Source: Hypanus sabinus (Eukaryota). Taken from it: 64,000 bases of DNA. The stretch covers positions 23,002,001 through 23,066,000 of the forward strand of contig NC_082731.1 of assembly GCF_030144855.1 (NCBI RefSeq). The letters are read 5' to 3'. The notes beneath the pieces were generated by a model. The model made no database searches and had not been told where the DNA came from. It saw only the letters and a list, made by a program, of their open reading frames with translations. A program made the translations under genes and the position numbers. This document shows positions 395-54,400 of the stretch, piece by piece (within the stretch, counting starts at the first letter, position 1; each line of letters starts with the position of its first letter).

Positions 395-843
395 ATGTGG
401 AGATTCGGCATCTGGATCGTGTGCGGTGCCTTGTTAACTGGTTTGTACGCAGCAGACGATTCAAAAGCATTCTCGAAACTGAATTCTGAAAAAAAACCGG
501 TAATATTACATTTTATGTTTTGACTTTATTTTTTAGATACGAGTCATGGAAACTCTGTCACTCAGACATTGCCACCGCAAATGAAGACAGAAGAAGAAAC
601 TGTGACTTTCAGCTGCACCTATGATACTACATGGGATAGTTATTATTTATATTTGTACCGACAAAGGCCAATGCAAAGTCTCGAATACGTACTGTACAAA
701 GATCATGATGAATACGAACAAAAAGCCGAATTTGCTAACAGACGCTTCAAATCCACTCTGGAGAAGGGAAGGAAATTATTTAGTGTTACCATCTCAAAGC
801 TGCAAATGAGCGACTCCGCAGTTTATTACTGTGCCCTAAGACG
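395..843 (+). CDS. TRAV/TRDV: T-cell receptor alpha/delta V segment (V1): leader exon 395-440, intron 441-536, V exon 537-843
   Basis: 46-nt leader MWRFGIWIVCGALLT(G), GT..AG phase-1 intron, then an open V exon DTSHG|NSVTQTLPPQMKTEEETVTFSC...YLYRQ...DSAVYYCALR. Cys23 at 614, Cys104 at 830, followed directly by an RSS. Trp41 is Leu (TTG). Alpha versus delta cannot be decided from this window. Confidence 0.93.
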
Positions 844-14499: not shown

Positions 14500-14850
14500 G
14501 ATCGAAATTTGAAAGGCCTAGAGAGAGAACACCTGGAAGGTATGCATCCAATATTGATATCTTCTCGGAGCGTAGGAAGGCAAGACGTCTCTGTAGGCAG
14601 ACAAGAGATAAAATTTATTTTGCCAGAGGGAAATGAATCCGTGTAATTTATTGACGCAGACGGCTGCAGGGACAAATACTTTGCACATAATTAAAGCGGC
14701 GATAAGTTCTTGATTATAACTGGATTCAAATGCTTGGAGAAGAAAGTAGGAGAATGGAGCTGAGAAGAAAGGTCATTCATCATGATCGATGTCGGATCAG
14801 GCCTGATGGGCTCAATGGACTAAATCTGCTCTTAGGTCTATAGTCTTTTG
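14500..14850 (+). mobile_element. CR1 LINE 3' end
   Basis: ggggacctcatggaacggatcgaaatttgaaaggcctag...gatgggctcaatggactaaatctgctc...tagtctt is the typical CR1 3' region and tail. Confidence 0.65.
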
Positions 14851-17689: not shown

Positions 17690-18460
17690 GTATACAGCGG
17701 ATTCAATGACGTAGAACTAAAACGCGAGGATGTCCTGAAGAGTGGGTATAGAGAGCTTTGCAGGAAGTTAAAAAGCAGAGCGGTTTTGTCAGGATTGCTG
17801 CCTGTGCCACGTGCTAGTCAGGAGAAGAGTATAATGCTCTGGCGGATTATCACGTGGCTGAGGAAGTGGTGTAGCGGGCAGTGTTTCTGATTTCCGGAAC
17901 ATTGGAATCTCTTCTGCAGAGGGTTATACATGTATAAGACAGACGGAATACACATTAACTGCAGGGCAGCCAAAATCATTGCAGTGAGGACTTTATTGCT
18001 ATTGAGGAGGGTTCAAACCACATTTTCATGGGGATGGGAAACAGGGCAGATAGTGGGGTGAGAGTGAAAATAAATAATGTTAAAAGTTCATGCAGTGTCA
18101 GAAATAGAAGGCCTGTGTGAGGTTGAAATAATCTTCTGAAGTGTATCTATTTCAATGCGAGAAGTATTGTGGGAAAGGCAGACGTACTGAGAAGTTGGTT
18201 GACATGTGGAAATATGACATTATAGCCATCAGTGAATCTTGACTACAGGGAAAGTCAGGACGGACAGCTTAATGTTCCAAGCGGAGAAATAGGAAATGTG
18301 TGTCCACATTGTTGGGGTTGTATTACAGACCGCCCAATAGTCAGAGGAGACAATCTGCAGAGAGATAGCAGACAACTGCAGGAAACATAAAGTTGTGATA
18401 GTACGGAATTTTAATTTTCCACATATTGATTGGGACAACCATACTGTTAAGGGTCTAGAC
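17690..18460 (+). mobile_element. CR1 LINE 5' part (ORF1 esterase-like region and start of ORF2 endonuclease), interrupted at 18460
   Basis: FNDVELKREDVLKSGYRELCRKLKS...SGLLPVPRAS...WLRKWC, then KCIYFNARSIVGKA...KYDIIAISES. Confidence 0.85.
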
Positions 18461-19165
18461 CAGGGGTCGGCAACCCGCAGCTCCGGAACCGCATGTGGAT
18501 TCTTTCATCTCTGTGCTGCGGCTCCCTGTGGCTTTGGAAAATAAATGAACAGTATTTAATTAAAATGTATTTTATGTTAGTTTGTTATTTTTTGAAATGT
18601 AATTCTAAATTTGAAGATTATGGTGATCTTGTACAATCAAAATAAAACGTTGTGGCGACCCATTTCCTGACACATCCGAACCTGCTCACAATTAGACAGC
18701 GTTCAGGCTAAGGGGAGGTAACCTACGGAGGTTTCTGAGTACGTGTCTTTTGGAGCATTCGCGCCCACGGGGGGTGGGGGGAGTGGGGGTGGGGGGTGTG
18801 TTGAGGGAGGCCTTAAAGCAAGGCTGTTTAATTCGAATAAAGTTATCTTTGACTGCAGATTACCGACTCCATGTCGTTATTTTAGCGCTGCGTGTAGCAC
18901 ACCGCGACAACGTGTTTTTATCGCTATTAATATACGTCACCACCTCCAATGCCTGACACCCATCAGTGAGCGATTTATTTTAATTTTTTGATCCAAGGTA
19001 GGCTAACTATGGAGTAACCTTCAACCCAACGTCTTTTTTTCGGAGTTCAATATGTCTTTGTTGCATGCAGGAATGTAATTTCGTTTTCTCTGCTGGAGTT
19101 CATCGTTTTCATAAATGAAACACATTATAGTTTGTTTATACATAGCATAAAGGCAAACAAAAGTT

Positions 19166-22100
19166 GAATTTGATGAAACATAGGTAAAAAATTCAATGTA
19201 AATAAATCTTTATATTTCTGGGTAATTTTTATACCTAAATAAATAAAGTTATCATTAACAACTTTAAATGGTATCCTTTCATCCAATAAAGTTTGCGCGT
19301 TTGAAGGGAATAAATCACTCTTATCCAAGTTTAGTTTAAAACCAGAAAAACTACCAAATTGAGCCAACAAAGATAAATTAGCGGGAATAGACCTGCCAGG
19401 ATCAGAAAGCTATAACAACAGGTCATCAGCATAAAGTGATAACCTGTATAATTTCTCATTACGGTTAATACCAAAAATATTAGGAGATTCACGAATAGCA
19501 ATGGCTAAAGGTTCTGATGCAATATTAAACAATAAAGGACTTAAGGGCAACCTTGTCTCGTACCACGAGATAATTGAAAAAAAAGAGGATCTATAATAAT
19601 TTGTAAGAACAGAAGCAACAGGTTTATAATATATTAGTTTGATCCATGATATAAAATAAGGACTAAAATTAAAATATCTCAGAGCGTTAAATAAGTATAC
19701 CCATTCAACTCTATCAAAAGCTTTTTCAGCATCTAATGAAATAACACATTCTGGAATTGTGGGTGATGAAGTATAAATTATATTAATCAATTTTCTAATA
19801 TTAAAAAAGGAATACCGATTCTTAATAAAGCCAGTTTGGTCTTCTGAAATAATCTGTGATAGTACCTTTTCTAACCTAATAGCTAAAATTTTTGTAAGAA
19901 TCTTAGAGTCTACATTTAATAGCGATATAGGGCGATAAGATGCACATAAAGTGGGATCCTTATCTTTTTTGAGAATTAAAGAGATAGTAGCTTCATAAAA
20001 AGACTGAGGTAATCTCTTCTTAACAAATGCATCATTAAAGATTTCACATAACCAAGGGGAAAGCAAAGAAGAAAAACTTTTTAAAAATTCTATAGTATAA
20101 CCATCAGGACCAGGAGCTTTTCCCTGAATTCATTAATGAGATAGCCTCTCCTATTTCGGCCAAAGAGATAGGAGCGTCAAACAAGCTGTCAGTTTGGGTA
20201 TATTCAAATTGTTAAAAAACTTATCCATCATGGACAGATCACCATCAAATTCTGATTGATGTAAAGATTTATAAAAATCTTGAAAAATGTTATTGATTTC
20301 TTTATCATCAGTAGTTAGATTGCCATCTTGTTGACGATTTTTTTTAAAATTTGTCGCTTAGTCGAGATTGCTTTTAATTGTTTAGCTAACAGTTTACCAG
20401 TTCGATCACTACGGATATAAAATTGAACCCTGGTCCTAATTAATTGATTCTCAATTGAAGAATATAGTAACAAGCTATGCTCCATTTGAAGCTCAACTCT
20501 CTTCTTATAAAGTTCTTTAGTCGGAGTAACGGAATAAATCTTATCAATTTCTTTAATTTTATCCACTAATAGAGCAATATCAAAATATCTTTGTTTTCTT
20601 TTACCAACGGAATATGAGATAATTTGTCCACGGATAAAAGCCTTAAAAGAGTCCCAAAGTGTTCCTCTCTCTGTCAATCTCTTCAGTATAGTTTGTTGAG
20701 AAAAACTAGTCAATTTGCTGTTTTATGTTGGTGATGAATTCTGGATCTTGAAGCAAAGTAGCGTTAAGTCTCCAAGATCTAGTATAATTGGAAAAGTCCG
20801 AACTCTTGATAGATAACTTCAAAGGTGCATGATCCGAAAGAGCAATAGAATCATATTTACAGTCAATGACATCTGTTAATAAACGATGATCAATAAGAAA
20901 ATAATCAATTCTAGAATAACTGTGATATACATGTGGAAAAAACGAAAATTCTTTATCTTTAGGTTCATAAACCGCCATATTTCAGTAATTTCCGAATCAA
21001 CCATAAAAGAATTAATAAGTAAGGCTGATCTATTCGGAAGAATTCGAATAGGTTTAGATCTATCCATCGAAGGATTCAAACAACAATTGAAATCTGCACC
21101 CATTATCAACATATATTCATATAGATTAGGAAGCGAGGTAAATAAACGTTTAAAAAATTCAGGGCAGTCAAAGTTTGGAGCATAAATATTAACTACAACC
21201 ACTTTTCGATTAAAAAGTGAACCAGTTATCAACAAAAATCTACCCTGTGGATCAGAAATAATTTCATAATGTGTAAACGAGATTGAGGGGTCTATAAAAA
21301 TAGACACACCTCTAATTTTGGCCGTACAATTCGATTGAAATTGTTGTTCTTTCCAGATCCGAAGAAAGCTTTGATTATCCTCCCTCCTAATATGGGTCTC
21401 CTGTGCAAAAATAATATTAGTATTTAGTCTCTGGAATACTTTAAATATATTTTTTACGTTTAATCGTTTAAACCATTAGTATTCCAAGAGATAAAGTTAA
21501 TAGACTTGTCGATCATGCCAATATTAGTTGTGTATATCATAAAAGGTTAAAAAGACACATAACCCATAATTCATGAAGAAGGAGAAATGATTCAGGAGCA
21601 ACCGGAGAACATGACACCTTAACAATATTAATAATTTAAAGTCGGCCCATAAACTAAAAGCAAAAAAGTAAAAAGCAAAAGCGTGAAAAATTATCCCTAC
21701 CCCCTCCCCCAACCCCACGAAAGAAAGCCAAGCGGCAGGCGCACAAACTAACACTAATTTTACCCCCATTTTCAAGATGGCGACTTCATGAAAAGAAAGA
21801 AAAGAGAAACTATATAACACCCAGATATAAATACAGGGTTGTAAACAGAAAGAATATATATCAATCAAAATGAAAAAAAGTATAAAAAAGCAAAAAATCA
21901 TTAATAAAAAAAGGATAACCATTGAAGTTTAAAATAGTGTAATATGCCTTTAAAAAAAGGTTCCATATTCAAATATAAGGAAATGACGTATCAAAAACAG
22001 AGACTTATGTGAAAAAGAAACGACATTTTGAAAGGACCATATTACAAAAAAATAAATGTAAATTCACCAATCTTTTTTTTAAAAAGGGTTGTCAAAATAA

Positions 22101-23443
22101 AATTAAGAAAGGGTTCAACAATCACTACACCATAGTTAAAAAAAAGGTTCAAAAATTCAAAAGGATCGTCCCATTTTCAAATACAGGCAAAAAAGCGCAT
22201 ACGGAAAGCAAAGTCTTATGGTAAGAAGAAACGACACCTTAAAAAAAATAAATCATTATTACAAAGTCTTAACATGTATATCTAATCCAGAGGAAAAAAG
22301 GTTAATTAAGAAAAAATACATTATAGTAAAGTTAAAAGTGCATCTGTAAATCATGATCATGAAAAAAAACAGGTCTACAGACCAAAAAGCTATGTTACAG
22401 CTTCATAATTTAAAGCCTAAAACGGAATGGCGTCTTCTCTCCAAAAGTTCTTCCACATAACCCATAGTTCAAGTTGTACTAGAAGAGCGATATTCTTCAA
22501 CGAATTTCTTTGCTTCTTCCGGAGTATTAAAGAAACGCTGACTGTTATCGCTCAACGTAATTCTGAGATTCGCAGGATATCTTAAAGCTTGTTTAAGTCC
22601 AATCGAAAGGACCTCCGCCATCACCGGTTTAAAAGCGATTCTCGCCCTTATTACCTCGAATGAATAATCTTCAACAGTTCAAAACTCGTTGTATCTGTGA
22701 GAAATCATATCATTCGGACGAGCTAATCGAATTAAAAGCTCTTTCTCCGGAGTATAATGGAGACGGACAATCACAGCTCGTGGCTTGTCTTTCGCAGCCG
22801 AAAATCTCGAAACTCTGTGGGCACGATCAATAGTAGGTTTAACCCGCAAAGCGTCCTCGCCAAAAATTTCCCATAATAAATTAGAGAAATATTCGGTTAA
22901 GTCACCAGACTCAACATTTTCAGGAAATCCAATAATGCGCAAATTCTTTCTACGAGTCCGGTTTTCAAGATCGGTGATTTTGAACTTATACTGCTCCACT
23001 ATTTTAGCGGTCGACCGTACCTTCTCCTCCAAAGTTTCGATTGTACGCATTTTTTCACAATTTACCTTGTCAAGAGCCGCAAACTTTTCTTCATGCCGTT
23101 CAATATCTGCTGCCTGCGATTGAAGCTTGATATCAAATGATTTAACGACTTCTTCAAGCTCCGACATTTTCGCAGAAATTTTGTTTTCCAGACTTGCAAG
23201 TTTAGTATCCAAAAGACTGGAGATTGCATCGAGAGTTATAGGGTCCTTAGACGATTTCTTAGATACAGATATTTTAAGTTTGAAAAAATTAAATCCAGTG
23301 TTATTTTTAAAAAGAGAAATAAATCGTAAATATCAACCCATGTGATTAAGTACGCAAAGATTTGATTAAAGGGTGCTTATAGCTTAAAAAATGAAGAGCG
23401 CCTAAAGGCAGATGTTTACGTCGTCATCTTGAAACTACACCCC
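19166..23443 (-). mobile_element. L1 LINE, inverted 5' segment (5'UTR, ORF1 ~23270-22465, ORF2 EN-RT from 21516); disrupted
   Basis: ORF1: LENRTRRKNLRIIGFPE...IDRAHRV...PRAVIVRLH. ORF2: MIDKSINFISWNTNGLN, VVNIYAPN, YSRIDYF, SDHAP, YRPISLLNVDSKILTK, SLDAEKAFDRVEW, SLYADDLLL. The 5' end reads GGGGTGTAGTTTCAAGATG at 23443. Multiple frameshifts and stops. Confidence 0.95.
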
Positions 23444-25241
23444 TTATGGTCTCCCTTATACTTATCATTAGTTGGTCGGATTAATGCTATTAAAATGATG
23501 ATTCTACCAAAAATTTTATATTTATTTCAAGCTTTACAAATTTTTATTCCTAAATCTTTTTTTGATAACATTGACTCAAAAAGTTCTTCATTCCTGTGGC
23601 AAAAGAAAAATCCTAGGTTAAGTAAAAGACAATTACAAAAATCCAAAAATGTTGGTGGTTTAGCCTTACCTAACGTAAGATTTTACTATTGGGCGAATAA
23701 TATTCGTAACTTAATTTATTGGTAATCAGATTTGGATTCACCATTGTGCCCACAGTGGGTAAATTTAGAATGCAATGAGGCACAGGGATATTCTCTATTC
23801 TCCACTTTGGGTTCTTCTCTTACTGCCCATTTAGTTAAATTCAATAAACAGATATCCAACACTGTTGCCAAACATACATTACGAATTTGATTTCAATTTC
23901 GTAAATTTTTACTCTGAAAAACTTTGCTCTTGATAGCCCTGTTTTACTTTTTTTTTTTTTCAAACCTTCTTTGACAGATCAAGCTTTTAGGAATATGGAA
24001 AAGGAAAGGTATAAAATGCTTTCGTGATCTCTTTTTTGAAGGTAGTTTGATGTCGTTCGACCAACGTTCCAACAAATTTGAGTTACCTAAATCTAACTTT
24101 TTTTAGATCTCGACAAATCAGATATTTTTTACATAAAATTCTACTGTCCTTTCCCAATTCAACTTCAATGGACTTTTTAGGTTTGATTTTTACCATTAAT
24201 CCATATCAGAAAGGATAAGTGCCTTTCATTTATAATATGATTATGAAGATACAACCTGAAATATCAGGTAGAATTAAACAAGAATGGGAAAAAAGAACTC
24301 CAATATAATATATCAATAGAAAAATGGGGAAAAATACAAATGGTTAATTCTTCTTCTCTATGTGCTAAACATGCTCTAATACAATTTAAAGATGAACTTA
24401 GAGCTCATATGTCTAAAGATAAACTTGCTCGATTCTACTCTCATATTAACCCTCAATGTGACAGATGTCATTCAGATGTGGCTACATTGACCCATATGTT
24501 TTGGTCATGTCCCAACTTATATATCTATTGGAAGGACATATTTGCTACCATTTACTCAATTTGGAATATCGATTTACAACCTCATTTTATTACTGCAATT
24601 TTTGGTATACCAAATGAGGATGGTATTCAGTTTTCCCCTTCAATTAGACGAGGGATTGCTTTTGTAACAATAATGGCTAGAAGGTCTATATTACAAAATT
24701 GAAAAGAAATAAATCCTCCTACCACGTCTCAGTGACTCTTTAAAACTATTTCTTGTTTGAGCTTAGAAAAAAATTAGAAGCACTATTTTTGACTCATCAG
24801 TTAAATTTGAAGAAACTTGGGGACCGTTCATTCGACATTTTCATATGAATTAATTTGACCTCTCCCAGACCTTCTCCCTATTTATTCTTGCTGTGGTATG
24901 GAGTTCCGGAGTTTTTGACACTATCACATACAAATAAAATGTTATTATTGCCCATGTTAGTTTAGTTTAGTATTTATTTTTCAATATACATTTTTATTGT
25001 TTGTATTTTCACATTTTTTTCTTTTTCTTTGTCGATTATTCTTATTTTTTCATATAATCATTATAGGCTTGATTGATAATGTACTATGTTTTTCTGTTGA
25101 TATTTTAATGGGATATTGTTATCATATTATTAATCTAATTTCAAGTCTAATGTATTTATAACCTATTCATTATTATGTTATGTTTATATATATATATAAT
25201 TCAATAAAAGGATTGAAAAAAGAAAAAAAGAGAAAAAAAAA
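23444..25241 (+). mobile_element. L1 LINE 3' segment (ORF2 C-terminus, 3'UTR, polyA)
   Basis: WSPLYLSLVGRINAIKMMILPKILYLFQ...CDRCHSDVATLTHMFWSC (CCHC). Stop at 24851-24853, AATAAA at 25203, A-tail 25216-25241. Candidate TSD AAAAGTT at 19159-19165 and 25238-25244. Confidence 0.93.
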
Positions 25242-25349
25242 GTTTTATGCAGTTTTATTTCATTTTAAATGTCAAACGGGTTTTTTGGCTCCCAGTGTTT
25301 TATGTTCTGTGGGAACAGGATCCATCAGGCTCTTTCAGTGGTAAAGGTT

Positions 25350-27230
25350 TCTAAATCAAAATACAGAGGTACCAACAAGAGGGGATACACTATTAGATCT
25401 CCTATTTAGAAACGAGTTAAGACAGGTTACGAAAGTGTGTGTAGGGGAAAACATTGATTCCAGTGATCATAACTGCATTAGTTTCAACTTGCTCATGGAC
25501 AAAAATAGATCTGGTCCGCGGGTTGACGTTTTAAACTGGAAAAAAGACAAATTTGAAGAAATAAGATAGGAAGCAAAGAGAATGGATTCGGACAGTTCGT
25601 TATCTGGGAAGGATTTGATTGGTAAGTGGGAGGCATTCAAAGGGAAATTTTGAGAGGGCAGACATTGTATTTTCCTGTCAGGATTAAAGGCTAAGTGAAT
25701 TATAATAAGAAACGAAGGTTCTTGAGGGATATTTCAACTCAGATAAAGAGGAGGATAGGGTGTTAAAAACATGTGTAGGAAACGTGAATAAATAGGTGCT
25801 TGCGGAGTATAAAATTTGCAAAAAAATTTAAGACACTTATCAGGAGGGCTAACATGAGACATGTGGTTGTTTTGGCAGTCAAGGTAATGGATAATACTAA
25901 GAGCTTCTATAGATATATTAAGAACAAAAGGATAGTTAGTGATGAAATTAGTCCTCTTGAAGATCAGAGTGGTCGGCCATACACGGAAGCAAAAGCAATG
26001 TGGGACATCTTATATGACTTTTCTTGCGTCTCTGTTTACTATGGAAACTGGTATGGAGTCTATGTAAATAAGACAAACAGTTAGTGAGGTCATGCAACCT
26101 ATACAGATTAACGAAAAGGAGCTCCTTGCTGTCTTCAGGCACATCAGAATAGATATATTCGCAAGACCTGACAGGATATTCCCTCGGAACTCGAAGGAGA
26201 ATAGTCTTAATATGGCAGGGTCCCTGGCAGATATATTTTAAATGTCGGTATCTACCGGTGAGGTGATTGGAGGATATCTCATGTTGTTCCGTTGTTTAGA
26301 GAAGGCACTATATGTCTACCGGGGAATTGTTAGCCTGTACTTTTGTAGTCATTGATAGGTAAGTTATTGGAAGGCGTACTAAGAGATAATATCTACAATT
26401 ATTGAGGTAGACGGGACTTATTAGGGACAGTCAACATGGCTTTGCGCGTGGCAGGACCTGTTTAATCAATCTATCATAGTTTTTCGAGGAAGTTATCAAG
26501 AATGTGCATGAAGGGAAGGCAGTGGATATAGACTGCATGGACTTCAGTAAGGCCTTTGACAAGCTCCCGCATGGGAGGATAGTTAGGAAGACTGAGTACC
26601 TTGGTGTGCATAGTGAGTTAGTGAATTAGATTAGATATTGGCTCAGTGGGAAAAGCCAGAAAGTAGTACTGGAGGATTGTTTCTCTGAGTGGTGACCTGC
26701 GACTAGTTGTGTATCAGATGGATCAGTGCTGGGCCATTATTATCTGTCATCTACATCAATGATCTGGATGATAAATTACGAAACTGGATCAGCAAATCTG
26801 CTGATGACACAAAGATTGGAGTTGTAGCGGACAGTGAGGACGGCTTGCAAAGCTTGTAGAGGAATTTGGACCACCTGGAAAAATGGGCTGTAAAATTGAG
26901 TTTAATGCAGGCAAATGTAAGGTATTGCACTTTTGGAAGTGCAAACCACGGTAGAATATACCAGGTAAATGTTAGGATACTGAGGAGTGCTGAACAAAAG
27001 AGGGATCTGAGAATAAATATACTTAATTCGCCAAAAGTGGCGTCAAATATAGATACGGTCGTTAAGAGAGCTCTTGGCACAATGCCCTTTATGAATCAAA
27101 GTACTGAGTATTATAGTTTGAATGTTTTGCATAAGTCATTGCTGAGGCCGAATGTGGAATATTCTGTGATGTTTTCTTTTCACCTAATTACAGGAATGTT
27201 ACTAATAAGATTAGAAGAGAGCACGAGAGA
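25350..27230 (+). mobile_element. CR1 LINE continuation (endonuclease end, RT), decayed
   Basis: LDLL..N...SDHN, QHGFARGRTCLINL..FFEEV, MDFSKAFDKLPHGRIV, SVIYINDLDD..ISKSADDTKIG. Colinear with 56685-58460. Confidence 0.88.
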
Positions 27231-29869
27231 GAGTTAGAAAGACAGGGATACAGATGCTTAAACTGAGACATAACCACTGGAGAATATTCTTCCTTTCTCA
27301 TACTCATTCCCAAGCACTAATGATGATCACTGAAGATGATACCTGCACTTGACAGTGAGTCTGTATTTTGTCCTGCCAGGTTGGCGTTTGGATCTCAACT
27401 TTATTGTCGGCCTGTCCACACATTTTGCTCATATCGTTCAGAACTTCGGATAAATATTTTGGCACCCAGCAACTCTCGGAGATAATAGTTTAGAAAGGAC
27501 AGAGTATAATAATGAACTTTAATTATGGTGCAATGTTTGATGCAGATACTGTTCTTAGTACCTACAGTATCCCGGAGATTCGTCGATAAATCCACTGAAG
27601 AGACTAAGCCTTGGTTACGCACATCATACGCCCGATTTGCAAGATAGGTATTCCGGATTGCACGAGAGAGACTGCTTCAGGTTAATTTAAGTAAATCTGG
27701 AGTAATTTTCTCTACGTCAGTCTTGTTTCTTATATTATCATGCTTAAACTGCTTTCGGCAAAAAAGCAGGTGTACAACCATGCTGAATAAGAAACCTCGA
27801 GATCCCACGAGGGTGCATTCTTAACGGGGTGAGATAAAACGTTGTTTCAGCAATTCAAGAAGACAGATCAGAAAGACCATGCTGGTATATGAGGCGGAAT
27901 AGGGTTTGGCAAGTCCAGGTGGTGAAAGCAGCGGTTGGTGAAATACGGTGTGTAAACCATAAGATACCTCCAGATGTGTTACTAGATTCGCTTTTCACTC
28001 AGCAATCTTCTTTTCTTTGCACCCAAGACTTCGGGGCAACTTATCTGCAAAAAAATCAAGTTCAATGAGAAAAAAGAAACAAAACAAAGTTCAGCATACT
28101 AAAAGAAACATTTCTTGTGTATTATTTTCTCCCAACTCAATACCAAGAGCAATCTTGCATGAGGTCGTGAAGGGCATAGATTGTGCGGATATACAGAGGC
28201 GTATTGCCAAGGCTGATGTAGCTAACACGAGGGGTGGCATAGTTTTCATATGCTACAAAATAAGTGCAGATGGGATGTCAGGGGAGGATTTTCACACATG
28301 GAGTGGCGAGTGCATGGATTGCACTAACGGCGGCCGTGGTGGGAGCATATACCTTATATGCATATATCTTTTAAAAGCCTCTAAGATCGTAGTATAGAGG
28401 TTAGGCAAATAGAGGGTAATGCATTAGCGAACTTCTAGTCGGTTTCTAGGGTAGACTGCATGGTCGTAAAACATTCGCCTGTAATGTGTTGTAGATTTCC
28501 ATTTTTACTTTCTATTTTCCTGCTGTTATATAGAATATAGGAAATTATATAGAATATAGGAATATAGGAAATTATTCACTTGTGTTGAATGCATCCCCTT
28601 TGACCTAAATTACCTCTTTCAGATAGCCTCAGTACTTATATCTTCAGGTGCGTCTCATCAGCAGGCAGAACACAGGTCGAGTCATGATGTTGATTCAACT
28701 GTTACTTGGAACAGTACATACATTTTGGTGTATAATATTGCAGGTCGCATTTCTCATTGCAGAGAAGGAGGACTTGTAATCCAGGAGTTAAGTGAAACAT
28801 CGTAATAAGAAATTATAACAACAGTTAGAAGAACCCAAAGTTGTTAATGAGTATTCGCAATATTTCACGCAGTTCACCTTTTCCAATCGCATTTTTAAGC
28901 ATTAGTGGTCTCTCCTCTCTTTGTATTTGTTTTTTTTTTAAAGCAAGAATAATTTTTTTGCAGAGTTCATTGTGAACATTCATTTGAATATTTTTTTGAA
29001 TTCGCACTCATCTCTTGAGGTTGTTTTGTATTTCCTGATGTATGATGGCCGGATAAATTTAGCCCATCCACATTTAGACTCAAAGATCTTCTTGAATGAA
29101 TCAAATCCCGTTGCTTGACACGGTGGAAGAATAATTATTGCGAAACAGACGAGTTCCTTTCATTCCAATCAATGCATTTTACAGTTGTTCATTCAGATTT
29201 TCCACTCCAAATGACCAAAATATTCAAATTTCATAAAATTGCTATTATACAACAATGTTCTTAAAACTTCTTTGTTGGACTGTCTCAAAAATGTGTCTTA
29301 ATTTAAATGCACTTGAAATGAATATTGATGGAAATGTTTATCGAATGATATTGTCACATCTGCTCTATTCTTAAATAAAATTTCGGCCCATGCAATCTTA
29401 TCAATAAATCCCTCGCTACTTTTGACCCATACCGCTTGACCGATTTGAAGCTTCAATTAATATCCAAATTAAGTTCTGAATATATATTATTAACGACTGT
29501 GCCTCCACAAGTCTCTGTCGTAAATAGTCAGAGGCCAATGGGAAAGTAACTTCTTGGTCAATAAAGTTTTCGAAACAAAACTTCTACCCTGTGTTATAAG
29601 TAATATTTCCCCCAGAGCAAGATGCCACAATGAGGACAAACCCAGCAAACCCACCGTCCAGAAAAACGCAAACACGCAAATCAGTATGTTTCAGCAATTT
29701 CTTGTTAAATATATTTATCTTTTTTTCGGATAATGTTGATGTTTCTCTATTTTCTCGGAACTTAGATCAATGCTTCAACTGTTTTTTCCTTAATTGTTTT
29801 TTTTTTTTTGTTTCTGATTGAGTAATCCTGCTTTGATATCCAAATGTGAGCCTAGAAGCAAACACAGAA

Positions 29870-31529: not shown

Positions 31530-33070
31530 ATTGATGGTTACACAGGGATTAAAGGGGGACACTTACTATACAGCTCTAAAGGGCTCCTGTGTGATGTGCT
31601 CCGGGGTGGATGTGACAGATAACACTCTTATCATCTCCGTGGAGTGCGTCTCTGGGTGCATGATCTCTTATGCCGAACCAATACTGCTCCTCCCCACCCC
31701 AAAAAAAAAAATGTTCCAGGATCGCCCCGCACTGAGCGAACCCGGGCTTGTGTTTCCGTGGCGGAGGTAGTAACTGTCGAAGAGGAGCCCGTGAGACAGG
31801 TGCAACCAGCGCCGCGCCGACCCCGACTTTGTCCACGAAAGGATCATTGCTACCGGTGTGGCTTAGCAGGTCATTTCGCCCGGGAATGCTCCGCACCGGC
31901 ACAACGCTACAGCTCAGAGCAGCCATTGGGAAATGGCGAGTGGGAGCGCAGCCCGAGACCTCCAGTAGAACCACTCCGTATTTTCCGTTTGGGTGAGGAG
32001 CAAGGATTATACGTGGACTGCATGGTATAGGGCATCAAATGGTGTGCGTTGGTGGACACCGGGACAACCATCAGCATCATTTGTTCAAGTACAAGCCATT
32101 CTCGCCTGGCAGTCCAGCTGGTGCGGCCATCGGAAAGAGTGCGTCAATTCGAAAGAAGAGCGGTTTTCGCATCAGAGTGGAGAAAAACGCAGTCGTGCAC
32201 GAGGTGTGGCTCGCCGACATTAAACAGTCCTGAACCCAAGGCCTGGACCTGCTGCACAGCTGGGCGACCCATGTGGATGCCACACTCTCCCTGGTACTAA
32301 AAAGTGTGGTGGTGCAGCAACCAGAGCCAGTTTCATAGCAGCCCGTGGTAGTGCAGCACACCCGGCCGCGGCACAGTGCAACACAGCTGAAACACGGGCA
32401 AAAAGCGTTTATATCGTATCAGGAGACAACCCGCGACAACTTCGATATCATGGACCAGCAGTTGTGCAGCGAACAGGTGGGCAATCCACTGTTGGCCCAG
32501 GTGAGGGAATGGCAGAGTGTAGTACAGCCTGGATACAGAAACCAAAGCCCTATATTGTACTCGCTGTAGGGAATGCTGGAGGTCCACAACGGGCTTCTCT
32601 TCAGGCGGTAACATGTCCGATGGTGACAGACCCTTACAGCAGAAGACCTGCCGGGGTCTCTATGCCACAGTGCTGTGTTCGTTCCTTGGGTTGGTGGCGG
32701 CAGTCCGTATAGGGGTTGCAAAGTTGCTGGGTAGGATGGCTGAACGTTTTTATTGGCTTGGGTAATGCTTGTGCACTGCCGCGGCTCTTGCAAGACCCCG
32801 AAAGGGCTGGCCGCCAGTGTAGTGTCTCAATACATTAGTACATGTTCGAGGTCCCAGTATGGGTGTACAGACCCTTTCGGAAGAAGTGACTATCGGTCAG
32901 GCTTGAAAGCAATTGGAAGTGAACGGGAGAGGTACTCCACAGCATGTATAACGTGTTTAATAGGGTGCGGTTGCCTGAGTTGCGGAAGGCAGTCTGGTTG
33001 CACCGGGTCTGTCCGGCATAGTGTCAGACTTTGGCCACCACTAATCCCGCGACGCTGAAGGACGGAAGTG
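31530..33070 (+). mobile_element. Internally deleted Gypsy element: gag zinc knuckle, protease, integrase fragments
   Basis: CYRCGLAGHFAREC (CCHC; ORF 31644-32030), then LVDTGTTISII (aspartic protease; ORF 32049-32300), followed by decayed pol/int-like sequence. Confidence 0.8.
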
Positions 33071-37650: not shown

Positions 37651-39597
37651 TATCCTCAACAAACTCCGAAGGCGATTTTAAATGTTCTTATATATCATAG
37701 CGTCTGCCGCTCGGTCGACAGGCGGCTGATGAGTTTGCTGTCTTGCTGATATACTGGACCGCCTTTCTCGTTGGCTCAGTGCCACTCAGCACTGTTGCTA
37801 GCATTTTTGTTTGCAGGATTTCTGGATTGAAATCTCGTCCATGATTCCTACGGCAATCGTTGCTTGATATCGGCTTTAAAATTTAAACAACAAACTGCTG
37901 GCAGCCCTTTGCTTTCATCGGAAGTTATTCATTCCACACTTTCTGCAAGCACAGTCCTGCCTAATGTAGGTCGACAGCGAAGGAGTTTAGTAAAAATGGC
38001 ATGAAACGAGTTTCTCCAGTTGTCAAGAAAACATTCTGCAAAAGACACACAAAAGATCAATTCACAAAACTGAATAGAAGTAGTGATGTTACGGGGATGT
38101 GGTAGGAAAATGAACCCAAGTGCAGGTCTCCAACGCGGAGGCAGGATCAGGAGGCAAAATATCCGAGGCGGGTGTAGAATCGGGACTAGGTTGGGTCAGG
38201 ACCTGAGAGTTTTGTTTTACGAAGAAATACGGTGTCGAAGATTAACAGGAAGAGTCAGCTTCCTCATAGATTTCAGCTATCTGCCCGGACTCCTGTTTCA
38301 TCAATCCCGTCCTCCTGCGTATGGAGGGTGATTGCACGTATATGGGGCAAATTCTGTTCCAGAAGACAGAAGACCATTCGAAGTTTTGCAGACTGCAGTC
38401 TATTGAGTTCTCCATTTTAGCAAAAATGAGAGTCCCTCTTAAGTTTGAAAACGTTAACAATTGCTTAGAACAGACTTTCCCTTCAATGTATCGTGATAAT
38501 GCAAAAATGAGAGGGAAAATGGGATGGAGAGACAAGAGCAGGCAGATTCTTGGAATGAGGAGCGAGAAAATTGATCATCGTATTCACGGTCATAACAGTA
38601 CTCCTGCCCCTATGTATCTGCCAATCCATTTTCTATGCAAACAATTGTATTTAGTGTGCCATATTCTCGAAAGATCCAGGAAAGAAGTGGGAAGAAAAAA
38701 ACAAATAAATAAAACGGCAACTCTGGGAAAGCAGATTTGAGATGGAATGTATTACTTTAGTGGGCCTTCACTGAAAAAAAAAACTTTCGGTATATTTTAA
38801 TAGGCTTGTTTTATTGTATTAAATAGTTGTGATGCATTGCGGAGGCGGCCTAACAAGCCTTGTGCTACTCTATCCCTGCAAAGACAGTCAAAAAAATTAT
38901 TATCTCGTGGTGATCAAGGAATAATTTACATTTTCCAATTAACGCACCCCATACATATTCTTTGAATTGCGAAGTTAACCAGTTTCTCTGGGGATCCTCC
39001 ACGAACTCGACCATGTGTACGTACAGAGTCTCTTCACAACACCGCGCCACAAATGAACTACCAACTTCAAAATAACTCAAACTATAGCAGAGCTGTGCTA
39101 GCCAAAAAACCACGTGGCTTCCTACTGGAGTGACCGAAAGATAATTAGTGCAAGAGAGAAAAGAGAAGCTTTTTTTTAAAAGAAGAAAACACAGAATCAG
39201 ACTGTAGTAGGCAAGTATGTCGACTCCTTGTGGGTTAACGAGTCAGTTTAATGTCATATCGTTAGGGAACTCTCTGAGAGCGAATATCTATAGGGAGGTA
39301 ATAATACATGGAAATAATGCCGCAGTAGCATGCTCGAAGGGAAAGAGACAGATACGAGACTATGTATGAGAGCTGATAATACAATTAGCAGGCGTACAAA
39401 AACAAAGAATACAGAAGTCAAGAGGAAGAGAGAGGGTAAATAATGGATCGAAGAAATGACAGACAGCTATATATAAGACAAGCAGCGAGACAAACGAAAA
39501 ATAAAACGACAGGTAGATAGAGTATCAGGACACAGGTGCTGAGAGAATAACAGACTGCAAGGGAGAAGAGAGAGGGTGACTGGTGATTGGCGAAAGT

Positions 39598-39945
39598 GAC
39601 CATCGGTATTATTATCAGAAGAGATAAAATTAGCAGAACGACACATATATCAAGGAGCCAGAAAGAGTCAAAAGAAAATTGGGAGATATTAATGGCTAGA
39701 GTAAGGCAGAGACTTGGAAGTAAAAAGATAACGTAAAACTTGAGTACATACTGTACAAAGATAATGATGGAGTAGAAGATAAAGCCGAATTTGCCAAAGG
39801 ACCATCGGTATTATTATCAGAAGAGAAAAAAAATTAACAGAACGACACATATATCAAGGAAACAGAAAGGGACAAATGAATAATTGCGAGATATTAATGG
39901 CTAGAGTATGATAGAGACCTGGAAGTAAAAAGACAACGAAAGTGA
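39598..39945 (+). repeat. ~140-bp tandem duplication with a 60-bp V-gene CDR2 insert at the junction
   Basis: The arms 39598-39738 and 39800-~39945 both start gaccatcggtattattatcagaagaga. The insert 39739-39798 matches 41543-41602 at 57/60. Confidence 0.92.
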
Positions 39946-41258
39946 GAGAGAAACAAAGGGAGTAGAAATAAACAAAGATATTGACGTAGGTAGAAATTGA
40001 GAGAGGGAGAGAGAGTTTGAGCGAGATGCAGATAAAGTGAAGGAGGAAAACCTGTATCCTACACAGCATTCATTATTTGTGCTCCTTGCAGATTACTTTG
40101 GTTGCGCTGCCCACTGAGACTCTGTAAAAATGGACAATCTTTTTACCGTAGAACTCATGTACTCCTGGGTTGTCGAAGGCTCTGGTATCTTTCATCAGGA
40201 AGGAGACAGAATTGTATCCGCCGCGAAAAGATGTTTCCGTCAAGTGTCTGCTAAATTAATGATTGAAAACGGACAGACAAAACATTAAAATTATACATAA
40301 ATAAAAGGGCAGTCTACATTTCTTCCAGCATCCTGAGATATGCCCGACATATCGGTTGCAATATGTCCAAAGTTCACCAGAAGAATGACGGGGCAAGTTT
40401 TATGCTGAGTTGTAGAACTATTGAAGGATTACATGTAAATATTTTCGGAGGCCCTATGTCGTATTGTGCCGTGTATCTTTACGCTGTTGAGCTCAATCTA
40501 TCGTGGCGGTGCAGCCGAAATGCTACTCTGGTTGTTGCTAATCTCAATTGGCACTAAATGATGAACCGATAGCGAATGACGGAATGACAAGATGTGAGCA
40601 AACACACAAAGAGACACAAACACACACACGCGCATGTGCGAGCGCAAGCTCTTTCCGTCAGACTTACAGATACAGACACCGATGCGCAGAAAATAAAGCA
40701 ACAATGGCAAGCGTATAAGGATAGAAACCGCGAAGCAGAGAAATGTATTTTCTATTATACGGAGAATAGCTCCATCATATTTAACTGCAGTTTCTCTGTG
40801 ACTTTGTCAAATTATTTTAGCATTGTTTTTTTCTGTAAAATCCCGAGATATGTGTATAAACATATGTCTCAGGAACCGACAGACGTCTGATATTTGCCGT
40901 TATATTTATCGGTGCTTTGCGGAAAGTCGGCATGAAGGTCTGTGTTAGTATTTCCACCGTATATCTCTTTGGCATTTCGATCGACTGAGCAATGGAAAAA
41001 AAAATGTAATTTCGAGAACTGCAGGCTTATGTCGGCAGATGGCTGTCTCAGTCAGCGGGGTGTGACGCTCATTCCTTGAGGTACATGGCGCTGTCGCATT
41101 TGGTACAATAGGCGGAGCATGTCTCATGAGGGTGCGTTTCCATTGGGCGCGTTCACTTCCTGCCCATTATAGTACTTAAACAGTAGAATCGGAAAGTGCT
41201 GAATCCTGATGATAATTTGTTGATGAGAATAACATTCAACCCATTTTTCATAAAAATA

Positions 41259-41706
41259 ATGTGGAGATTCGTCATCTGGATCGTCTGCGGAGCTTGGTTT
41301 ACTGGTCTGTACGCTGCAGAAAATTCAAAAGCTTTCTCGAAACCGAATTCTGAAAAAAAATGTTAATATAAAATTTCATGTTCTGACATTATTTTTTAGA
41401 TACGAGTCATGGAAACTCTGTCACTCAGACAATGTCACCGCAGATGAAGACAGAAGAAGAGACTGTGACTTTCAGCTGCACCTATGATACTACATGGAGC
41501 TACTATACTTTATATTTGTACCGACAAAGGCCAAAGCTAAGTCTCGAGTACATACTGTACAAAGATAATGTTGGAGAAGAAGATAAAGCCGAATTTGCCA
41601 AAAGACGCTTCACATCCACTCTGGACGAGGAAAGGAAATTATTTAGTGTCACCATCTCAAAGCTGCAAATGGGCGACTCCGCAGTTTATTACTGTGCCCT
41701 AAGGCG
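41259..41706 (+). CDS. TRAV/TRDV: T-cell receptor alpha/delta V segment (V2): leader exon 41259-41304, intron 41305-41399, V exon 41400-41706
   Basis: 46-nt leader MWRFVIWIVCGAWFT(G), then an open V exon DTSHG|NSVTQTMSPQMKTEEETVTFSCTYDTTWSYYTLYLYRQRPKLSLEYILYKDNVGEEDKAEFAKRRF...DSAVYYCALR. Trp41 is Leu (TTG). Confidence 0.93.
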
Positions 41707-41745
41707 CACAGTGATGCATTGTAGTCAAATGCTCGTACAAAAATT
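41707..41745 (+). other. Recombination signal sequence, 23-bp spacer (V2)
   Basis: CACAGTG (41707-41713) + 23 nt + ACAAAAATT (41737-41745). Confidence 0.95.
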
Positions 41746-42030
41746 CACTTACTGTAGAATCCATGCTTTGATAGCTGCAGCTTGATATATTTGTAAACTC
41801 CTTTGTTATTGTGGTTTCACGCCACTAAGAGTAGCTGTTGAAGTTTCCCTCGCCTTCGTCTGTGAAAGCTCAGCAATGGTCTAACCGCTCCGGTTTTTCC
41901 AAAGACGCAGTGACATCTAGAGCCTCTGCCAAATCAGTTAATTTGTGAAATATACGTTAATGCCACAAGAGAATTACGAGCGGTAAAATTGAGACTGCCA
42001 TCACTCGGGGGGTGGGGGTTGGTGGTGGTG

Positions 42031-42031
<1 letters not shown>

Positions 42032-42096
<65 letters not shown>
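42032..42096. repeat. (GT)n microsatellite
   Basis: Direct reading. Confidence 0.95.
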
Positions 42097-51028: not shown

Positions 51029-51139
51029 TCTGCTGATCAGTTTGCCTCCCAGAAACTATCAGAGATAATAACCAGATAACAATTACAGCACGGAAACAAG
51101 CCATCTTGGTCCGTTTAGTCCGTGTTAAAAGTTGTGGAA

Positions 51140-51408
51140 GTTCCAACTTCCATAGTTATGGAGGGACATATGATAAAATTGAATTTTAATTATTGGCCAA
51201 TGCTTAATGCAAATGTTGCTTCCTATTACCCACAGTGTACCAGAGAAACGCTGCGGTATCTAGTGAGGAGAATAAGTGCTTCTTATGCACTTCAGTCGCC
51301 CAATTTAAAGATTGATATTCCGCAGTGCATGATAGAGACAGTTCTCTGTTTACTTTAAGTACTCCGGAGCTGTTTTCTCCACCTCGGTCATGTGTCACTG
51401 CATTACTA
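51140..51408 (+). pseudogene. Decayed TCR V segment, second family (psiV-B2), 5'-truncated
   Basis: ORF 51122-51358 VPTSIVMEGHMIKLN[F]NY...SYYPQCTRETLRYLVRRISASYALQSP, then, after frameshifts, FKD*YSAVHDRDSSLFTL..SGAVFSTSVMCHC (decayed ISGAVLSDSAMYYC; Cys104 TGC at 51399). Confidence 0.72.
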
Positions 51409-54400
51409 CTAACCGATGATGCAGTAGAATTAAGAGAATCAATGAAATGTATTACGGTTGTTTCTGAGATAAACAGAAAATTTAATTCATCATAACCAAG
51501 ATGCAATTTTTGGATTATTCTGCACAATAAGAATTACAGGCCGTGTTTGGTAAAAAAAAAAACCGTGAAGATGCACAAGAGGAAAATAAAACAAGAGGCG
51601 TAAGCAAAACGACAGAAGATGAAAGAGAGGCAGGAACACGAAGGACTGCATAAATCGGAGTCTGGTGCCATGGATTGCATTAGGAAGTTAATCCAGACAC
51701 GTTCATATATCCAGGTAGTTGTCATTTGGCATTCGAGCTATTTCGGCAATAGTAAAATGCAGTGTTGACATTTCATGCGCGGCTGGAAAAGATGGGCCAC
51801 ATAATCGTGTTTCATAGAGATAATGATGGGTCTTAGAACATCATGTTCTTTTATTCTTTATGATACCAGTCTTCGTAAAATAGATAGAAAATCCGAAGAA
51901 TTATCGAAATTTTTTATGAAAGTATGTTCGTCACCGTATCATATCAAATCATATCATATCACTGTATCATATCATAACTGTGATACAGTTTCCTCTGTGG
52001 ATACATAGCAAGTGTATAGAATATTAACAACAACATAATCAATAACATTCAGCCAGAGGGAAGATGATGATGAACGGCAACGTAAAAAAAACGAAAACGT
52101 AATCATCAGGTAGCAATACATATCAGGAACATAAGATGATACTCTGGTTGTTCTTGTTAGTTTTCGTGTTTGAAACAAAAAGAGTTTGATTTAAGAGCAT
52201 CGAACTGAAAATAATCATAATCTATCCAATGTCTATACGTCCACAGGATCTGTTTTCCGGCACATTTACCTTTACAACAGCTAGTACGTCCTCTGCTCTT
52301 TCACTCTGTTTTCTGTTCCAGTGTGTATCTAATGTAACCACTCCAGCTGCTTAATTTATCTGATTGTAAGGATATTTGTGCGACTTGAATTCAGTTGGAA
52401 CTTCTTCCTTCTGTACAGGGTCCATCGCCAATATTGTTCAGGATCGTATTGTTTCATTTCCAGTACAGCAGTACAGAAATGTGAAGAAAGAAACTCCTTC
52501 CAAAAGGACTGCCCGAACCATGAGACGCACATTTAACTGAAGTGACATTCTACTCTTATCTTCAGCTGAAGATCAGCAACTTTGCATTCTGGCTTTCCAA
52601 CCTCGTCATTAGGTACACTGAGTTTCTCTTACTCAAATACTTTAACATAGGTATTTACATTCACTATCCAAATGCCACCTCTTTTTCGCTAATTATCTGT
52701 TCCCTTGTGGTATACCTGCAGTGTAAACCTAAATTACTAAGCAGAAGGTAATGATATCCAGTTCCAATTACTATAAAATGTCGAGTTCTACATTATACTG
52801 AAACTGGTCTTTTTCGACGAGAGCAAACCATACGTGGTTTAAGTTGACACCAAATACATGGACAGAAAGCCAAAAGAAGGATTGCAATGAAACTCAGGAG
52901 ATTTAGGAAAGAGTCCGAAGAGCAGGCCATCCAAAGTAGCCATCGCTGGTTTTCACCCTGTGCCACATGATAGTCATAAAAAGGAATTGAATGACGGTAG
53001 AGTTAGATGCGTGGTTGACTATCTGGCGTTACAGACATCTGGAAACAAACGACAGGCTCAAGCTGCATTAGACAATGGCTGCCGACTAGTCGGTTGCCAG
53101 CGGAAACACTGACTGGTTTCAGGGGTTTGTGATGCGACTGGACAGATTACTAGGTAAGATAATATATGCAGTTCAAACACCCAAACTATTGGCTACTTAG
53201 GTGAAACCTCCCAAGAAAGTGTGCGTGCTGATAGCCACGCTATGTGACCATATGTTCTGCTGTGACGGACAGTGTAATAATTTGTAGAATTTTACACTTG
53301 GCAGCTCAAATTAAATTGTTTTACTGGGGCTAGCGTAATGGAGACCTTACAGTAGTGCTACCAAATTCCATAGTCTCTTGCTGCTCCGTTTATTGCTGCT
53401 CTCCCGAACTAATTCACTAAGTGGAAAGAATGTCACATGGACAGAACAATAGTACTTTGTAATGGATCGTGATTTAGCATCACTTTTTATTAACCTGTCG
53501 CCAGAGTCACAGGATCATATTACTTGCACATGAGAAGCAGATGGTACATCTTTACCAGATTGCCTCAGGAAAATATGCATAGCCTTACACTATATCTTGG
53601 ACTGAAAGCGTGAAACAACAGGGAATATGTTCATTGGGAAAAATACAACTCGCAAAAAGGTACCAGGAAACCTATCACCGCCAGGATTTTCGGGTGCCCA
53701 GTGCTGCATTTCGTTGCGATGGGAGATATATAAAGGGGTCGCCGATCTGAATCAGCATCTAATTAGAAGCATGAAATTAAATTCGATAATCTATCTGTTA
53801 CATCGGCAAATGAAATTCATGTATTAACTGAAAGATATTTACGTATTCTTCCGCAATATCATGAATGTTAGTGGAGAATAGCCAATCAGAAATAATATAT
53901 GATATTTAGCACACCAATTGTTCATGGGCATTGCTAATTCAATGGTACTCCTTTAAACTGCAAAAAAAAAGTATTCGTTTCAGGTGGAAGGCAATCATAA
54001 ATGGGAATAGGAAGAAAAATCAGCCACAATAAAATAAAAGTTGGATCAATATCAGAGGTGATCTAAAGCCAGCAATACACGGATGCCCGTTTACTTTAAA
54101 AGTTTTTTTGGTAATTTCTATCCCCGAGATAATTCCTGCAATTCCACCGTGGTTTTCATACATACAGAGCAACAAAGCATTAAAGTGCATTCACGCAGCT
54201 ATACAGGAACACAGCGAGAAAGGCGAACGGAAAAACCGAAAGGCCAGTCTGTGATGTGCCATAGCATGAACATGTTTTGCAAGCACAATTTTAATTACAG
54301 CAAAATGTCCTATAAAAAGTGTGTTTTATCTTTCTGGATCTAAGATTCAGTTTCCTATTATGGATCACTGCAGTAGTGAAAATAGATTCAAAGAGAAAGA

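What the first reader, a model, noticed from the sequence alone, without database searches (positions are those of the whole stretch)
39739..39798. An isolated 60-bp copy of the V2 CDR2 region is parked 1.8 kb upstream of V2
Seen: CTTGAGTACATACTGTACAAAGATAATGATGGAGTAGAAGATAAAGCCGAATTTGCCAAA (LEYILYKDNDGVEDKAEFAK) matches V2 41543-41602 at 57/60 and V1 at 48/60. It sits exactly between two arms of a ~140-bp tandem duplication, with GAC shared at the return junction. Both amino-acid-changing differences fall inside CDR2 (V->D, which is the V1 residue, and E->V). Inferred: it arose by replication or repair template switching (FoSTeS/MMBIR-like) into the V gene. Speculative: a mini-donor with conserved flanks and a variant CDR2 could template gene conversion of V2 in the germline or in lymphocytes, analogous to avian pseudo-V donors.
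Basis: partly seen in the sequence, partly recalled or inferred. Interest (0 to 1): 0.8.

Follow-up and report, generated by a model that had tools for sequence, protein, structure and literature searches.

The report
Stray V-gene fragment: old repair scar
A 60-base piece of a T-cell-receptor V gene really does sit 1.8 kb upstream of that gene, at the joint of a small tandem duplication, but it looks like an old, neutral scar of a DNA copying or repair slip and not a working template for diversifying the receptor.

Summary
Window 39739-39798 matches the end-of-FR2/CDR2/start-of-FR3 part of V2 (41543-41602) at 57/60 and V1 at 48/60. It lies exactly between two direct arms (39598-39737 and 39800-39941, 90.6% identical), and GAC is shared at the return joint.

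It is the only stray V fragment in the 64 kb. Homology to V2 stops abruptly, so it is not a decayed V gene.

With V1 as outgroup, two of the three differences arose in the fragment. One (D to V) arose later in V2, so the "variant CDR2" is ordinary drift. The fragment carries 2 changes against 3.0 expected if it is neutral and as old as the arms.

Distances order the events: unit duplication (0.159), then small duplication plus insert (0.100). The structure is therefore old, not a chimera of identical reads.

Best reading: one template-switch event (replicative FoSTeS/MMBIR, or polymerase-theta end joining of a failed repair intermediate) copied 60 bases from V2 and re-copied about 142 bases. 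This is a known kind of mutation.

Nothing supports the gene-conversion donor idea. It is a single copy with 25-26-base perfect flanks and no sign of constraint.

I could not test read support, other units or other species. Low interest.

The parts
39585..39600 (+). Return site: sequence just before arm 1 (ATTGGCGAAAGTGAC) that resembles the exit point in V2 (ATTTGCCAAAAGAC). The exact shared GAC is 39598-39600.
   Evidence: The homeology is not above chance: P=0.18, a test whose 20-mers were mis-registered by 1-3 nt and not anchored at the joints.
39598..39737 (+). Arm 1 of the tandem duplication (140 nt).
   Evidence: 126/139 aligned bases identical to arm 2. No other copy in the window.
39739..39798 (+). 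60-bp templated insert copied from the V2 lineage: last 6 codons of FR2, CDR2, first 7 codons of FR3. It has no leader, splice site or RSS, and a stop codon lies in frame 6 codons upstream.
   Evidence: 57/60 to V2, 48/60 to V1, E 6e-23. Homology ends abruptly on both sides.
39800..39941 (+). Arm 2 of the tandem duplication (142 nt). It is followed by (G)TGAG at 39942-39947, which arm 1 also has as TTGAG at the V2 entry point.
41543..41602 (+). Template segment inside the V2 exon, intact at the donor site.
41259..41745 (+). V2 gene segment: L-part1 41259-41304, intron, V-exon 41400-41706, heptamer 41707-41713, 23-nt spacer, nonamer 41737-41745.
   Evidence: (V-set, E 1e-13).
680..739 (+). Homologous 60 bp of the paralogue V1 (unit 1), used as outgroup to polarise the three differences.
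39559..39576 (+). 18-nt homopurine run 22 nt upstream of arm 1. Together with 39999-40015 it brackets the duplicated segment. Possible polymerase-stalling sequence (inference only).
   Evidence: The tract 39300-40020 is 71% purine.
39999..40015 (+). 17-nt homopurine run about 55 nt downstream of arm 2.
39972..39995 (+). Unexplained 24-nt stretch, 20/24 identical to the centre of the insert.
   Evidence: Smith-Waterman 26, P about 0.01 by shuffling, second-best locus in the window. Post hoc.

Best explanation
A single, old germline mutational event made this structure. A growing DNA end in a purine-rich tract 1.8 kb upstream of V2 left its template near the end of what is now arm 1. It paired by a few bases (GAG) with the V2 exon on the same chromosome and copied about 60 bases across FR2-CDR2-FR3. 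It then left again and re-paired by a few bases (GAC) about 142 bases behind its starting point, so that stretch was copied twice. The product is arm, V fragment, arm. The event could have been replicative template switching (FoSTeS/MMBIR). It could equally have been polymerase-theta-mediated end joining of an over-extended break end, with a templated filler. The two give the same product and cannot be separated here. Since then the fragment has drifted as neutral DNA and has no role in the receptor. Shown: the anatomy, the relative ages and the polarity of the differences. Inferred: the single-event origin and the enzymology.
For: The insert lies exactly at the joint of two direct arms that are otherwise unique in the window. 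The donor V2 is intact, in cis, in the same orientation and 1804 bp away. GAC is shared at the right joint and GAG at the left. Homology to V2 and V1 does not extend beyond about 60-69 bp, so this is not a decayed V gene. The arms differ by JC 0.100 and the two 40.9-kb units by JC 0.159 over 18.2 kb. The insert is far closer to V2 (3 differences) than to V1 (12). The order of events is therefore unit duplication, then small duplication plus insert. Fisher's test shows no age difference between arms and insert (P=0.40). About 3.0 neutral changes are expected on the insert lineage and 2 are seen when polarised with V1. Small tandem duplications of about 100 bp to 10 kb with microhomology and occasional templated insertions at the joint are a documented outcome of TMEJ on failed SDSA intermediates (PMC8654963).
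Against: Microhomology is only 3 nt per joint, and the longer imperfect homeology is not above chance in this composition (P 0.18 and 0.77; the 20-mers in that test were mis-registered by 1-3 nt and not anchored at the joints, and it was not rerun). The left joint is not clean: TAAAACTTGAG fits neither the arm-2 continuation nor V2 exactly. That needs later point changes, a small extra filler, or a different donor paralogue. No empty site, other unit, other species or raw reads could be examined. The single-event claim therefore rests on parsimony. A nearby 24-nt similarity to the insert is not explained by the simple model.
Confidence: 0.8

Rival explanations
1. Gene-conversion mini-donor. 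The fragment is kept as a template that can overwrite CDR2 of V2, in the germline or in lymphocytes, like avian pseudo-V donors.
For: It lies upstream of a functional V, in the same orientation, without an RSS. Conserved flanks surround two CDR2 differences. According to earlier, unchecked notes the genome is a stingray. Shark thymocytes mutate TCR alpha V genes, probably through AID (PMC5931798), so the initiating lesion could exist in T cells of this group.
Against: It is the only such fragment in 64 kb. Chicken donors form arrays of dozens of near-full-length pseudogenes (49 light-chain and 120 heavy-chain; PMC10917233). Its perfect flanks are only 26 and 25 nt. It offers only two amino-acid alternatives, and one is simply the ancestral residue that V2 later lost. 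There is no sign of constraint: 2 changes against 3.0 expected under neutrality. The reference V2 carries neither variant. The shark TCR study describes point and tandem mutations, not templated tracts.
Confidence: 0.02
2. Assembly artefact: a chimeric read or mis-join placed V sequence in a collapsed or expanded repeat.
For: Read support could not be checked, and no independent assembly was found.
Against: The insert differs from V2 at 3 of 60 bases and the arms differ at 13 of 139 aligned bases, plus 4 gap columns. A recent chimera would be made of identical sequence. The divergences fit a coherent time order with the unit duplication.
Confidence: 0.04
3. Two independent events: a plain tandem duplication first, and later a separate capture of a V2-derived patch at a break. 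The patch could be DNA or a reverse-transcribed V2 transcript, as in class 2 templated sequence insertions.
For: Templated patches from transcribed regions are captured at double-strand breaks (PMC5110952). The fragment lies within one exon, so an RNA template cannot be excluded. The insert-V2 distance (0.05) is nominally lower than the arm distance (0.10).
Against: A second event landing within a few bases of the earlier joint is improbable: roughly 12 of 290 positions, my estimate. The distance difference is not significant (Fisher P=0.40) and is expected because the V2 side is under constraint. The donor is 1.8 kb away in cis and in the same orientation, which favours local template switching. 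Germline transcription of an unrearranged V segment is not expected to be high (general knowledge).
Confidence: 0.08
4. Same mechanism but a different donor: the template was another member of this V family elsewhere in the locus, not V2 itself, and the three differences are inherited from that donor.
For: The locus is built of repeated units, and only two family members are visible in the window. The left joint fits V2 imperfectly.
Against: V2 is the nearest V, 1.8 kb away. Three differences are what drift predicts. One of them is the ancestral state shared with V1.
Confidence: 0.15

Closest known systems
Small tandem duplications with templated insertions at the joint (polymerase-theta-mediated end joining of failed SDSA intermediates; Kamp et al. 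2021, PMC8654963)
   Same: A head-to-tail duplication in the 100 bp-10 kb size class, short microhomology at the joints, and a filler copied from an intact template nearby.
   Different: Those events were seen in C. elegans repair mutants over a few generations, and the fillers usually come from sequence right next to the break. Here the filler is 60 bp from 1.8 kb away, the event is old, it sits in a vertebrate reference assembly, and the enzyme is unknown.
FoSTeS/MMBIR complex rearrangements (replicative template switching; general knowledge, with related examples in PMC5120786 and PMC6258378 listed)
   Same: Serial template switches guided by 2-5 nt of microhomology, producing a duplication with an inserted segment from a nearby locus in the same orientation.
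   Different: The described human cases are usually kilobases to megabases long. This one is 142 + 60 bp.
Class 2 templated sequence insertions (Onozawa and Aplan, PMC5110952)
   Same: A short patch copied from elsewhere, with the donor left intact and end-joining features at the joints.
   Different: Those patches come from distant, transcribed regions, probably through RNA, and lack flanking duplication. Here the donor is local and the insert is flanked by a 142-bp duplication.
Avian pseudo-V gene-conversion donors (PMC10917233, PMC449846)
   Same: V-derived sequence upstream of a functional V, without an RSS or leader, that differs from the functional V in a CDR.
   Different: The avian donors are arrays of dozens of near-full-length pseudogenes serving one rearranged Ig V in AID-expressing B cells, with donor tracts seen in transcripts. 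Here there is one 60-bp piece at one of many TCR V segments, no evidence of use and no evidence of constraint.

Membership tests
Tandem duplication with templated junction insertion (template switching / TMEJ) | Head-to-tail direct duplication of otherwise unique sequence | tested here: met
   Arms 39598-39737 and 39800-39941 are 90.6% identical and have no other copy in the window.
Tandem duplication with templated junction insertion (template switching / TMEJ) | The extra sequence lies exactly at the joint and has an intact template elsewhere | tested here: met
   The insert at 39739-39798 fills the gap between the arms. Its template at 41543-41602 is intact inside a complete V2.
Tandem duplication with templated junction insertion (template switching / TMEJ) | Microhomology at each switch point, above chance | tested here: inconclusive
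   GAC (right) and GAG (left) are shared, 3 nt each. Longer homeology is not above random pairs from the same regions (P 0.18 and 0.77; that test was mis-registered by 1-3 nt, not anchored at the joints, and not rerun).
Tandem duplication with templated junction insertion (template switching / TMEJ) | Duplication and insertion arose in one event (an empty site exists, and no intermediate allele does) | not testable with these tools
   No other unit, species or assembly could be retrieved. The ages are compatible.
Pseudo-V gene-conversion donor system | Donor lies upstream of the functional V and lacks an RSS and leader | tested here: met
   It lies 1.8 kb upstream with no RSS or leader, and a stop codon lies in frame 6 codons upstream. 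This is a trivial property of any stray internal fragment.
Pseudo-V gene-conversion donor system | Multiple diverse donors per acceptor | tested here: not met
   This is the only V1/V2-derived fragment in 64 kb. The rest of the locus was not visible.
Pseudo-V gene-conversion donor system | Homology long enough on both sides of the variable patch | tested here: not met
   The fragment is 60 bp in total, with perfect blocks of 25, 5 and 25 nt after the first mismatch. Chicken donors are V-gene-length (PMC10917233).
Pseudo-V gene-conversion donor system | Donor kept by selection | tested here: inconclusive
   There are 2 lineage-specific changes against 3.0 expected under neutrality, P(<=2)=0.42. 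This gives no evidence of constraint, but the test has low power.
Pseudo-V gene-conversion donor system | Donor-templated tracts in rearranged transcripts | not testable with these tools
   No repertoire data are available here.
Decayed V pseudogene (relic of a whole V segment) | Residual homology across the V exon, leader or RSS beyond the fragment | tested here: not met
   BLAST of the full V1 and V2 (487-488 bp) with word size 7 hits only 39739-39802. The flanks are the duplicated arms.

The most novel reading that the evidence does not exclude
The fragment is a working, or at least occasionally used, short-patch donor. In ray germ cells, or in thymocytes where AID-type mutation acts on TCR V genes, lesions in CDR2 of V2 would sometimes be repaired from this 60-bp copy. 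That would write the linked D and V residues into V2. It would be the first templated (conversion-type) diversification of a TCR V gene, and the seed of a pseudo-V donor system caught at its start.
Probability: 0.02. Interest if true: 0.75.

Novelty: new member of a known kind. Interest (0 to 1): 0.15.

Why it matters
As it stands this is a tidy natural example of a known mutational scar: a small tandem duplication with a templated filler. It is preserved long enough in a slowly evolving genome to be dated against a neighbouring segmental duplication. It also freezes an earlier state of V2's CDR2, showing that V2 changed Asp to Val after the copy was made. It would matter for immunology only if the fragment were used as a conversion donor, and nothing here supports that.

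Tried and rejected
1. Decayed V pseudogene. Rejected because homology to V1 and V2 is confined to 60-69 bp.

2. A 203-bp duplicated unit that already held the fragment. Rejected because the 60 nt after arm 2 are at chance-level identity to the insert in register (about 17/60 by eye), while the arms are 90.6% identical. Only a 24-nt local similarity exists.

3. An older tandem periodicity of the purine-rich tract. Arm 1 against the upstream and downstream tract, and pre-arm against post-arm, give no significant similarity (P 0.45, 0.69, 0.10). TRF finds no array.

4. A transposable element carrying the fragment. There are no other copies of the arms in the window. Only two weak, short inverted repeats lie in or around the tract, 11-12 nt long and 83-91% complementary.

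5. A known RNA family. There is no Rfam hit in the whole window at gathering score.

6. Extended junction homeology as proof of microhomology-mediated switching. It is not above chance. In that test the 20-mers were mis-registered by 1-3 nt and the alignment was local, not anchored at the joints. I did not rerun it with corrected coordinates.

7. Orthologous or independent copies of the locus. The V2 ORF finds only one distant V-set protein (38%, a teleost). Exact look-ups of two local ORFs find nothing. Earlier-findings look-ups by sequence were blank.

Full report
**What is there**

Window 39739-39798 is a 60-base stretch that matches 41543-41602 at 57/60 without gaps. The BLAST E-value within the window is 6e-23. 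It matches 680-739 at 48/60.

The two matching sites lie inside two intact V gene segments. V2 has a leader part at 41259-41304, an intron, a V-exon at 41400-41706, a CACAGTG heptamer at 41707-41713, a 23-nt spacer and an ACAAAAATT nonamer. V1 has the same layout at 395-882. Both exons score as Pfam V-set domains, E 1e-13 and 6e-15.

The 60 bases cover the last six codons of FR2 (LEYILY), CDR2 (KDNVGEE in V2) and the first seven codons of FR3 (DKAEFAK). The fragment has no leader, splice site or RSS. An in-frame stop lies six codons upstream. A search with the full 487-488-bp V1 and V2 sequences, word size 7, finds nothing else in the window. It is therefore a single isolated fragment, not the remains of a whole V gene.

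**The setting**

The fragment lies exactly between two direct arms, 39598-39737 and 39800-39941. They share 126 matches, 13 mismatches and 4 gap columns, which is 90.6% identity. The arms have no other copy in the window.

The surrounding tract, 39300-40020, is 71% purine on the + strand. It shows no significant older periodicity. Homopurine runs of 17-18 nt lie at 39559-39576 and 39999-40015 and bracket the duplicated segment.

The window as a whole holds two copies of a unit of about 40.87 kb: 1-31162 against 40869-63907, at 79-87% identity. The spot homologous to the fragment, upstream of V1, would lie about 1.1 kb to the left of the window and cannot be seen.

**The joints**

At the right joint the observed sequence is TTTGCCAAAG-GAC-CATCGG. 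V2 reads TTTGCCAAAA-GAC-GCTTC. The sequence before arm 1 reads GGCGAAAGT-GAC-CATCGG. The arm-to-arm alignment also runs about 12 nt into the end of the insert.

At the left joint GAG is common to V2 (CTCGAG) and to the continuation of arm 2 (GTGAG). The bases just before it (TAAAAC) fit neither template exactly, so this border is blurred over 39733-39745.

I tested whether the longer imperfect homeology at the joints exceeds chance. I compared the two junction pairs with 20,000 random pairs of 20-mers from the V exon and the purine-rich tract. It does not: P is 0.18 for the right joint and 0.77 for the left. That test has two weaknesses. The 20-mers I used were mis-registered by 1-3 nt, and the alignment was local, not anchored at the joints. 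I did not rerun it with corrected coordinates, so the P values are approximate. What can be claimed is 3 nt of microhomology at each joint, typical of such events but weak as evidence on its own.

**Age and polarity**

With V1 as outgroup, the three differences between fragment and V2 resolve as follows.
- The T at 39741 (CTT against CTC, silent) is a change on the fragment's lineage.
- The T at 39773 (GTA against GAA) is also a change on the fragment's lineage.
- The A at 39767 (GAT, Asp) is shared with V1 and is therefore ancestral. V2 changed Asp to Val after the copy was made.

The "variant CDR2" is thus one ordinary substitution on each side. The fragment is in effect a fossil of an earlier V2.

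The Jukes-Cantor distance between the arms is 0.100. If the fragment is as old as the arms and neutral, 3.0 changes are expected on its 60 bases. Two are seen, P(<=2)=0.42. The arm divergence and the fragment-V2 divergence do not differ significantly (Fisher P=0.40).

The two 40.9-kb units differ by JC 0.159 over 18.2 kb. The order of events is therefore unit duplication, then small duplication plus insertion. This agrees with the fragment being much closer to V2 (3 differences) than to V1 (12).

These divergences also argue against a recent assembly chimera, which would be built of identical sequence.

**Mechanism**

The simplest history is one event. A growing 3' end left its template at the end of the arm and paired with V2, 1.8 kb downstream on the same chromosome. 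It copied about 60 bases, then re-paired about 142 bases behind where it had started, so that stretch was copied twice.

This is the product expected from replicative template switching (FoSTeS/MMBIR, general knowledge). It is equally expected from polymerase-theta end joining of break ends that were extended but failed to anneal. In C. elegans that route gives tandem duplications of about 100 bp to 10 kb whose joints show microhomology and occasional templated insertions (PMC8654963).

I cannot tell these two routes apart from sequence. An RNA or cDNA patch of the kind described for class 2 templated insertions (PMC5110952) cannot be excluded, because the fragment lies within one exon. It is less likely given the local, same-orientation donor and the flanking duplication.

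The homopurine runs beside the duplicated segment could have stalled a polymerase. That is inference only.

**The donor idea**

Earlier notes of this scan say the genome is a stingray and that this region is the TCR alpha/delta locus. I did not verify this. If it is so, the idea is slightly less far-fetched than in a mammal, because shark thymocytes mutate TCR alpha V genes, probably through AID (PMC5931798).

The sequence gives the idea no support.
- The fragment is a single copy.
- It has perfect flanks of only 25-26 nt.
- It offers only two alternative residues, one of them the ancestral one.
- It has drifted at the neutral rate.
- Its variants are absent from the reference V2.

Chicken donors, by contrast, are arrays of dozens of V-length pseudogenes within about 20 kb upstream of the functional V (PMC10917233). 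The shark study reports point and tandem changes, not templated tracts.

**Left unexplained**

A 24-nt stretch 30 nt past arm 2 (39972-39995) matches the centre of the fragment at 20/24. Its Smith-Waterman score is 26, against a shuffle null of 16.5 +/- 3.0 (P about 0.01). Only one other locus in the whole window scores as high. Both CDR2 bases at which the fragment differs from V2 add to this match. I noticed this by eye in a purine-rich tract, so it may be chance. The simple model does not need it, and I could not fit it into a cleaner one.

**What could not be done**

The V2 ORF finds only one distant relative, a 38% identical teleost V-set protein. Exact look-ups of two local ORFs find no contig. 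No other assembly, unit or species was therefore available. Read support, the empty site and the identity of the donor all remain untested.

**Verdict**

The inferred origin by template switching is well supported as a class of event. The functional speculation is unsupported. This is a new instance of a known kind of mutation, of low general interest.

Noticed in passing
window 1-31162 and 40869-63907: The window holds two copies of a unit of about 40.87 kb, at 79-87% identity (JC 0.159 over 18.2 kb), each carrying a V of the V1/V2 family. Unit 1 has large extra blocks at about 10978-16276 and 18460-25350 that are absent from unit 2.
   Followed up: partly
window 9233-9586, 51139-51506 and 27485-27726: A second V-like family pair (83-84% identical between units) has a more distant third relative at 27485-27726 (71-72% identity) that was not in the notes I saw.
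   Followed up: no
window 31644-32030: An ORF with a CCHC zinc knuckle (Pfam PF00098, E 4e-5), surrounded by overlapping ORFs on both strands. It is probably a decayed retroelement gag inside the unit.
   Followed up: no
No Rfam family reached its gathering score anywhere in the window. The site touches the window end, so a truncated match could have been missed.
   Followed up: no
window 39972-39995: A 24-nt stretch just past arm 2 is 20/24 identical to the centre of the V-derived insert. It matches the insert better than it matches V2 itself.
   Followed up: partly
window 41990-42050: A (CA)n microsatellite lies about 250 bp downstream of the V2 RSS. It shows up as poly-His/Thr and poly-Cys/Val ORFs.
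   Followed up: no
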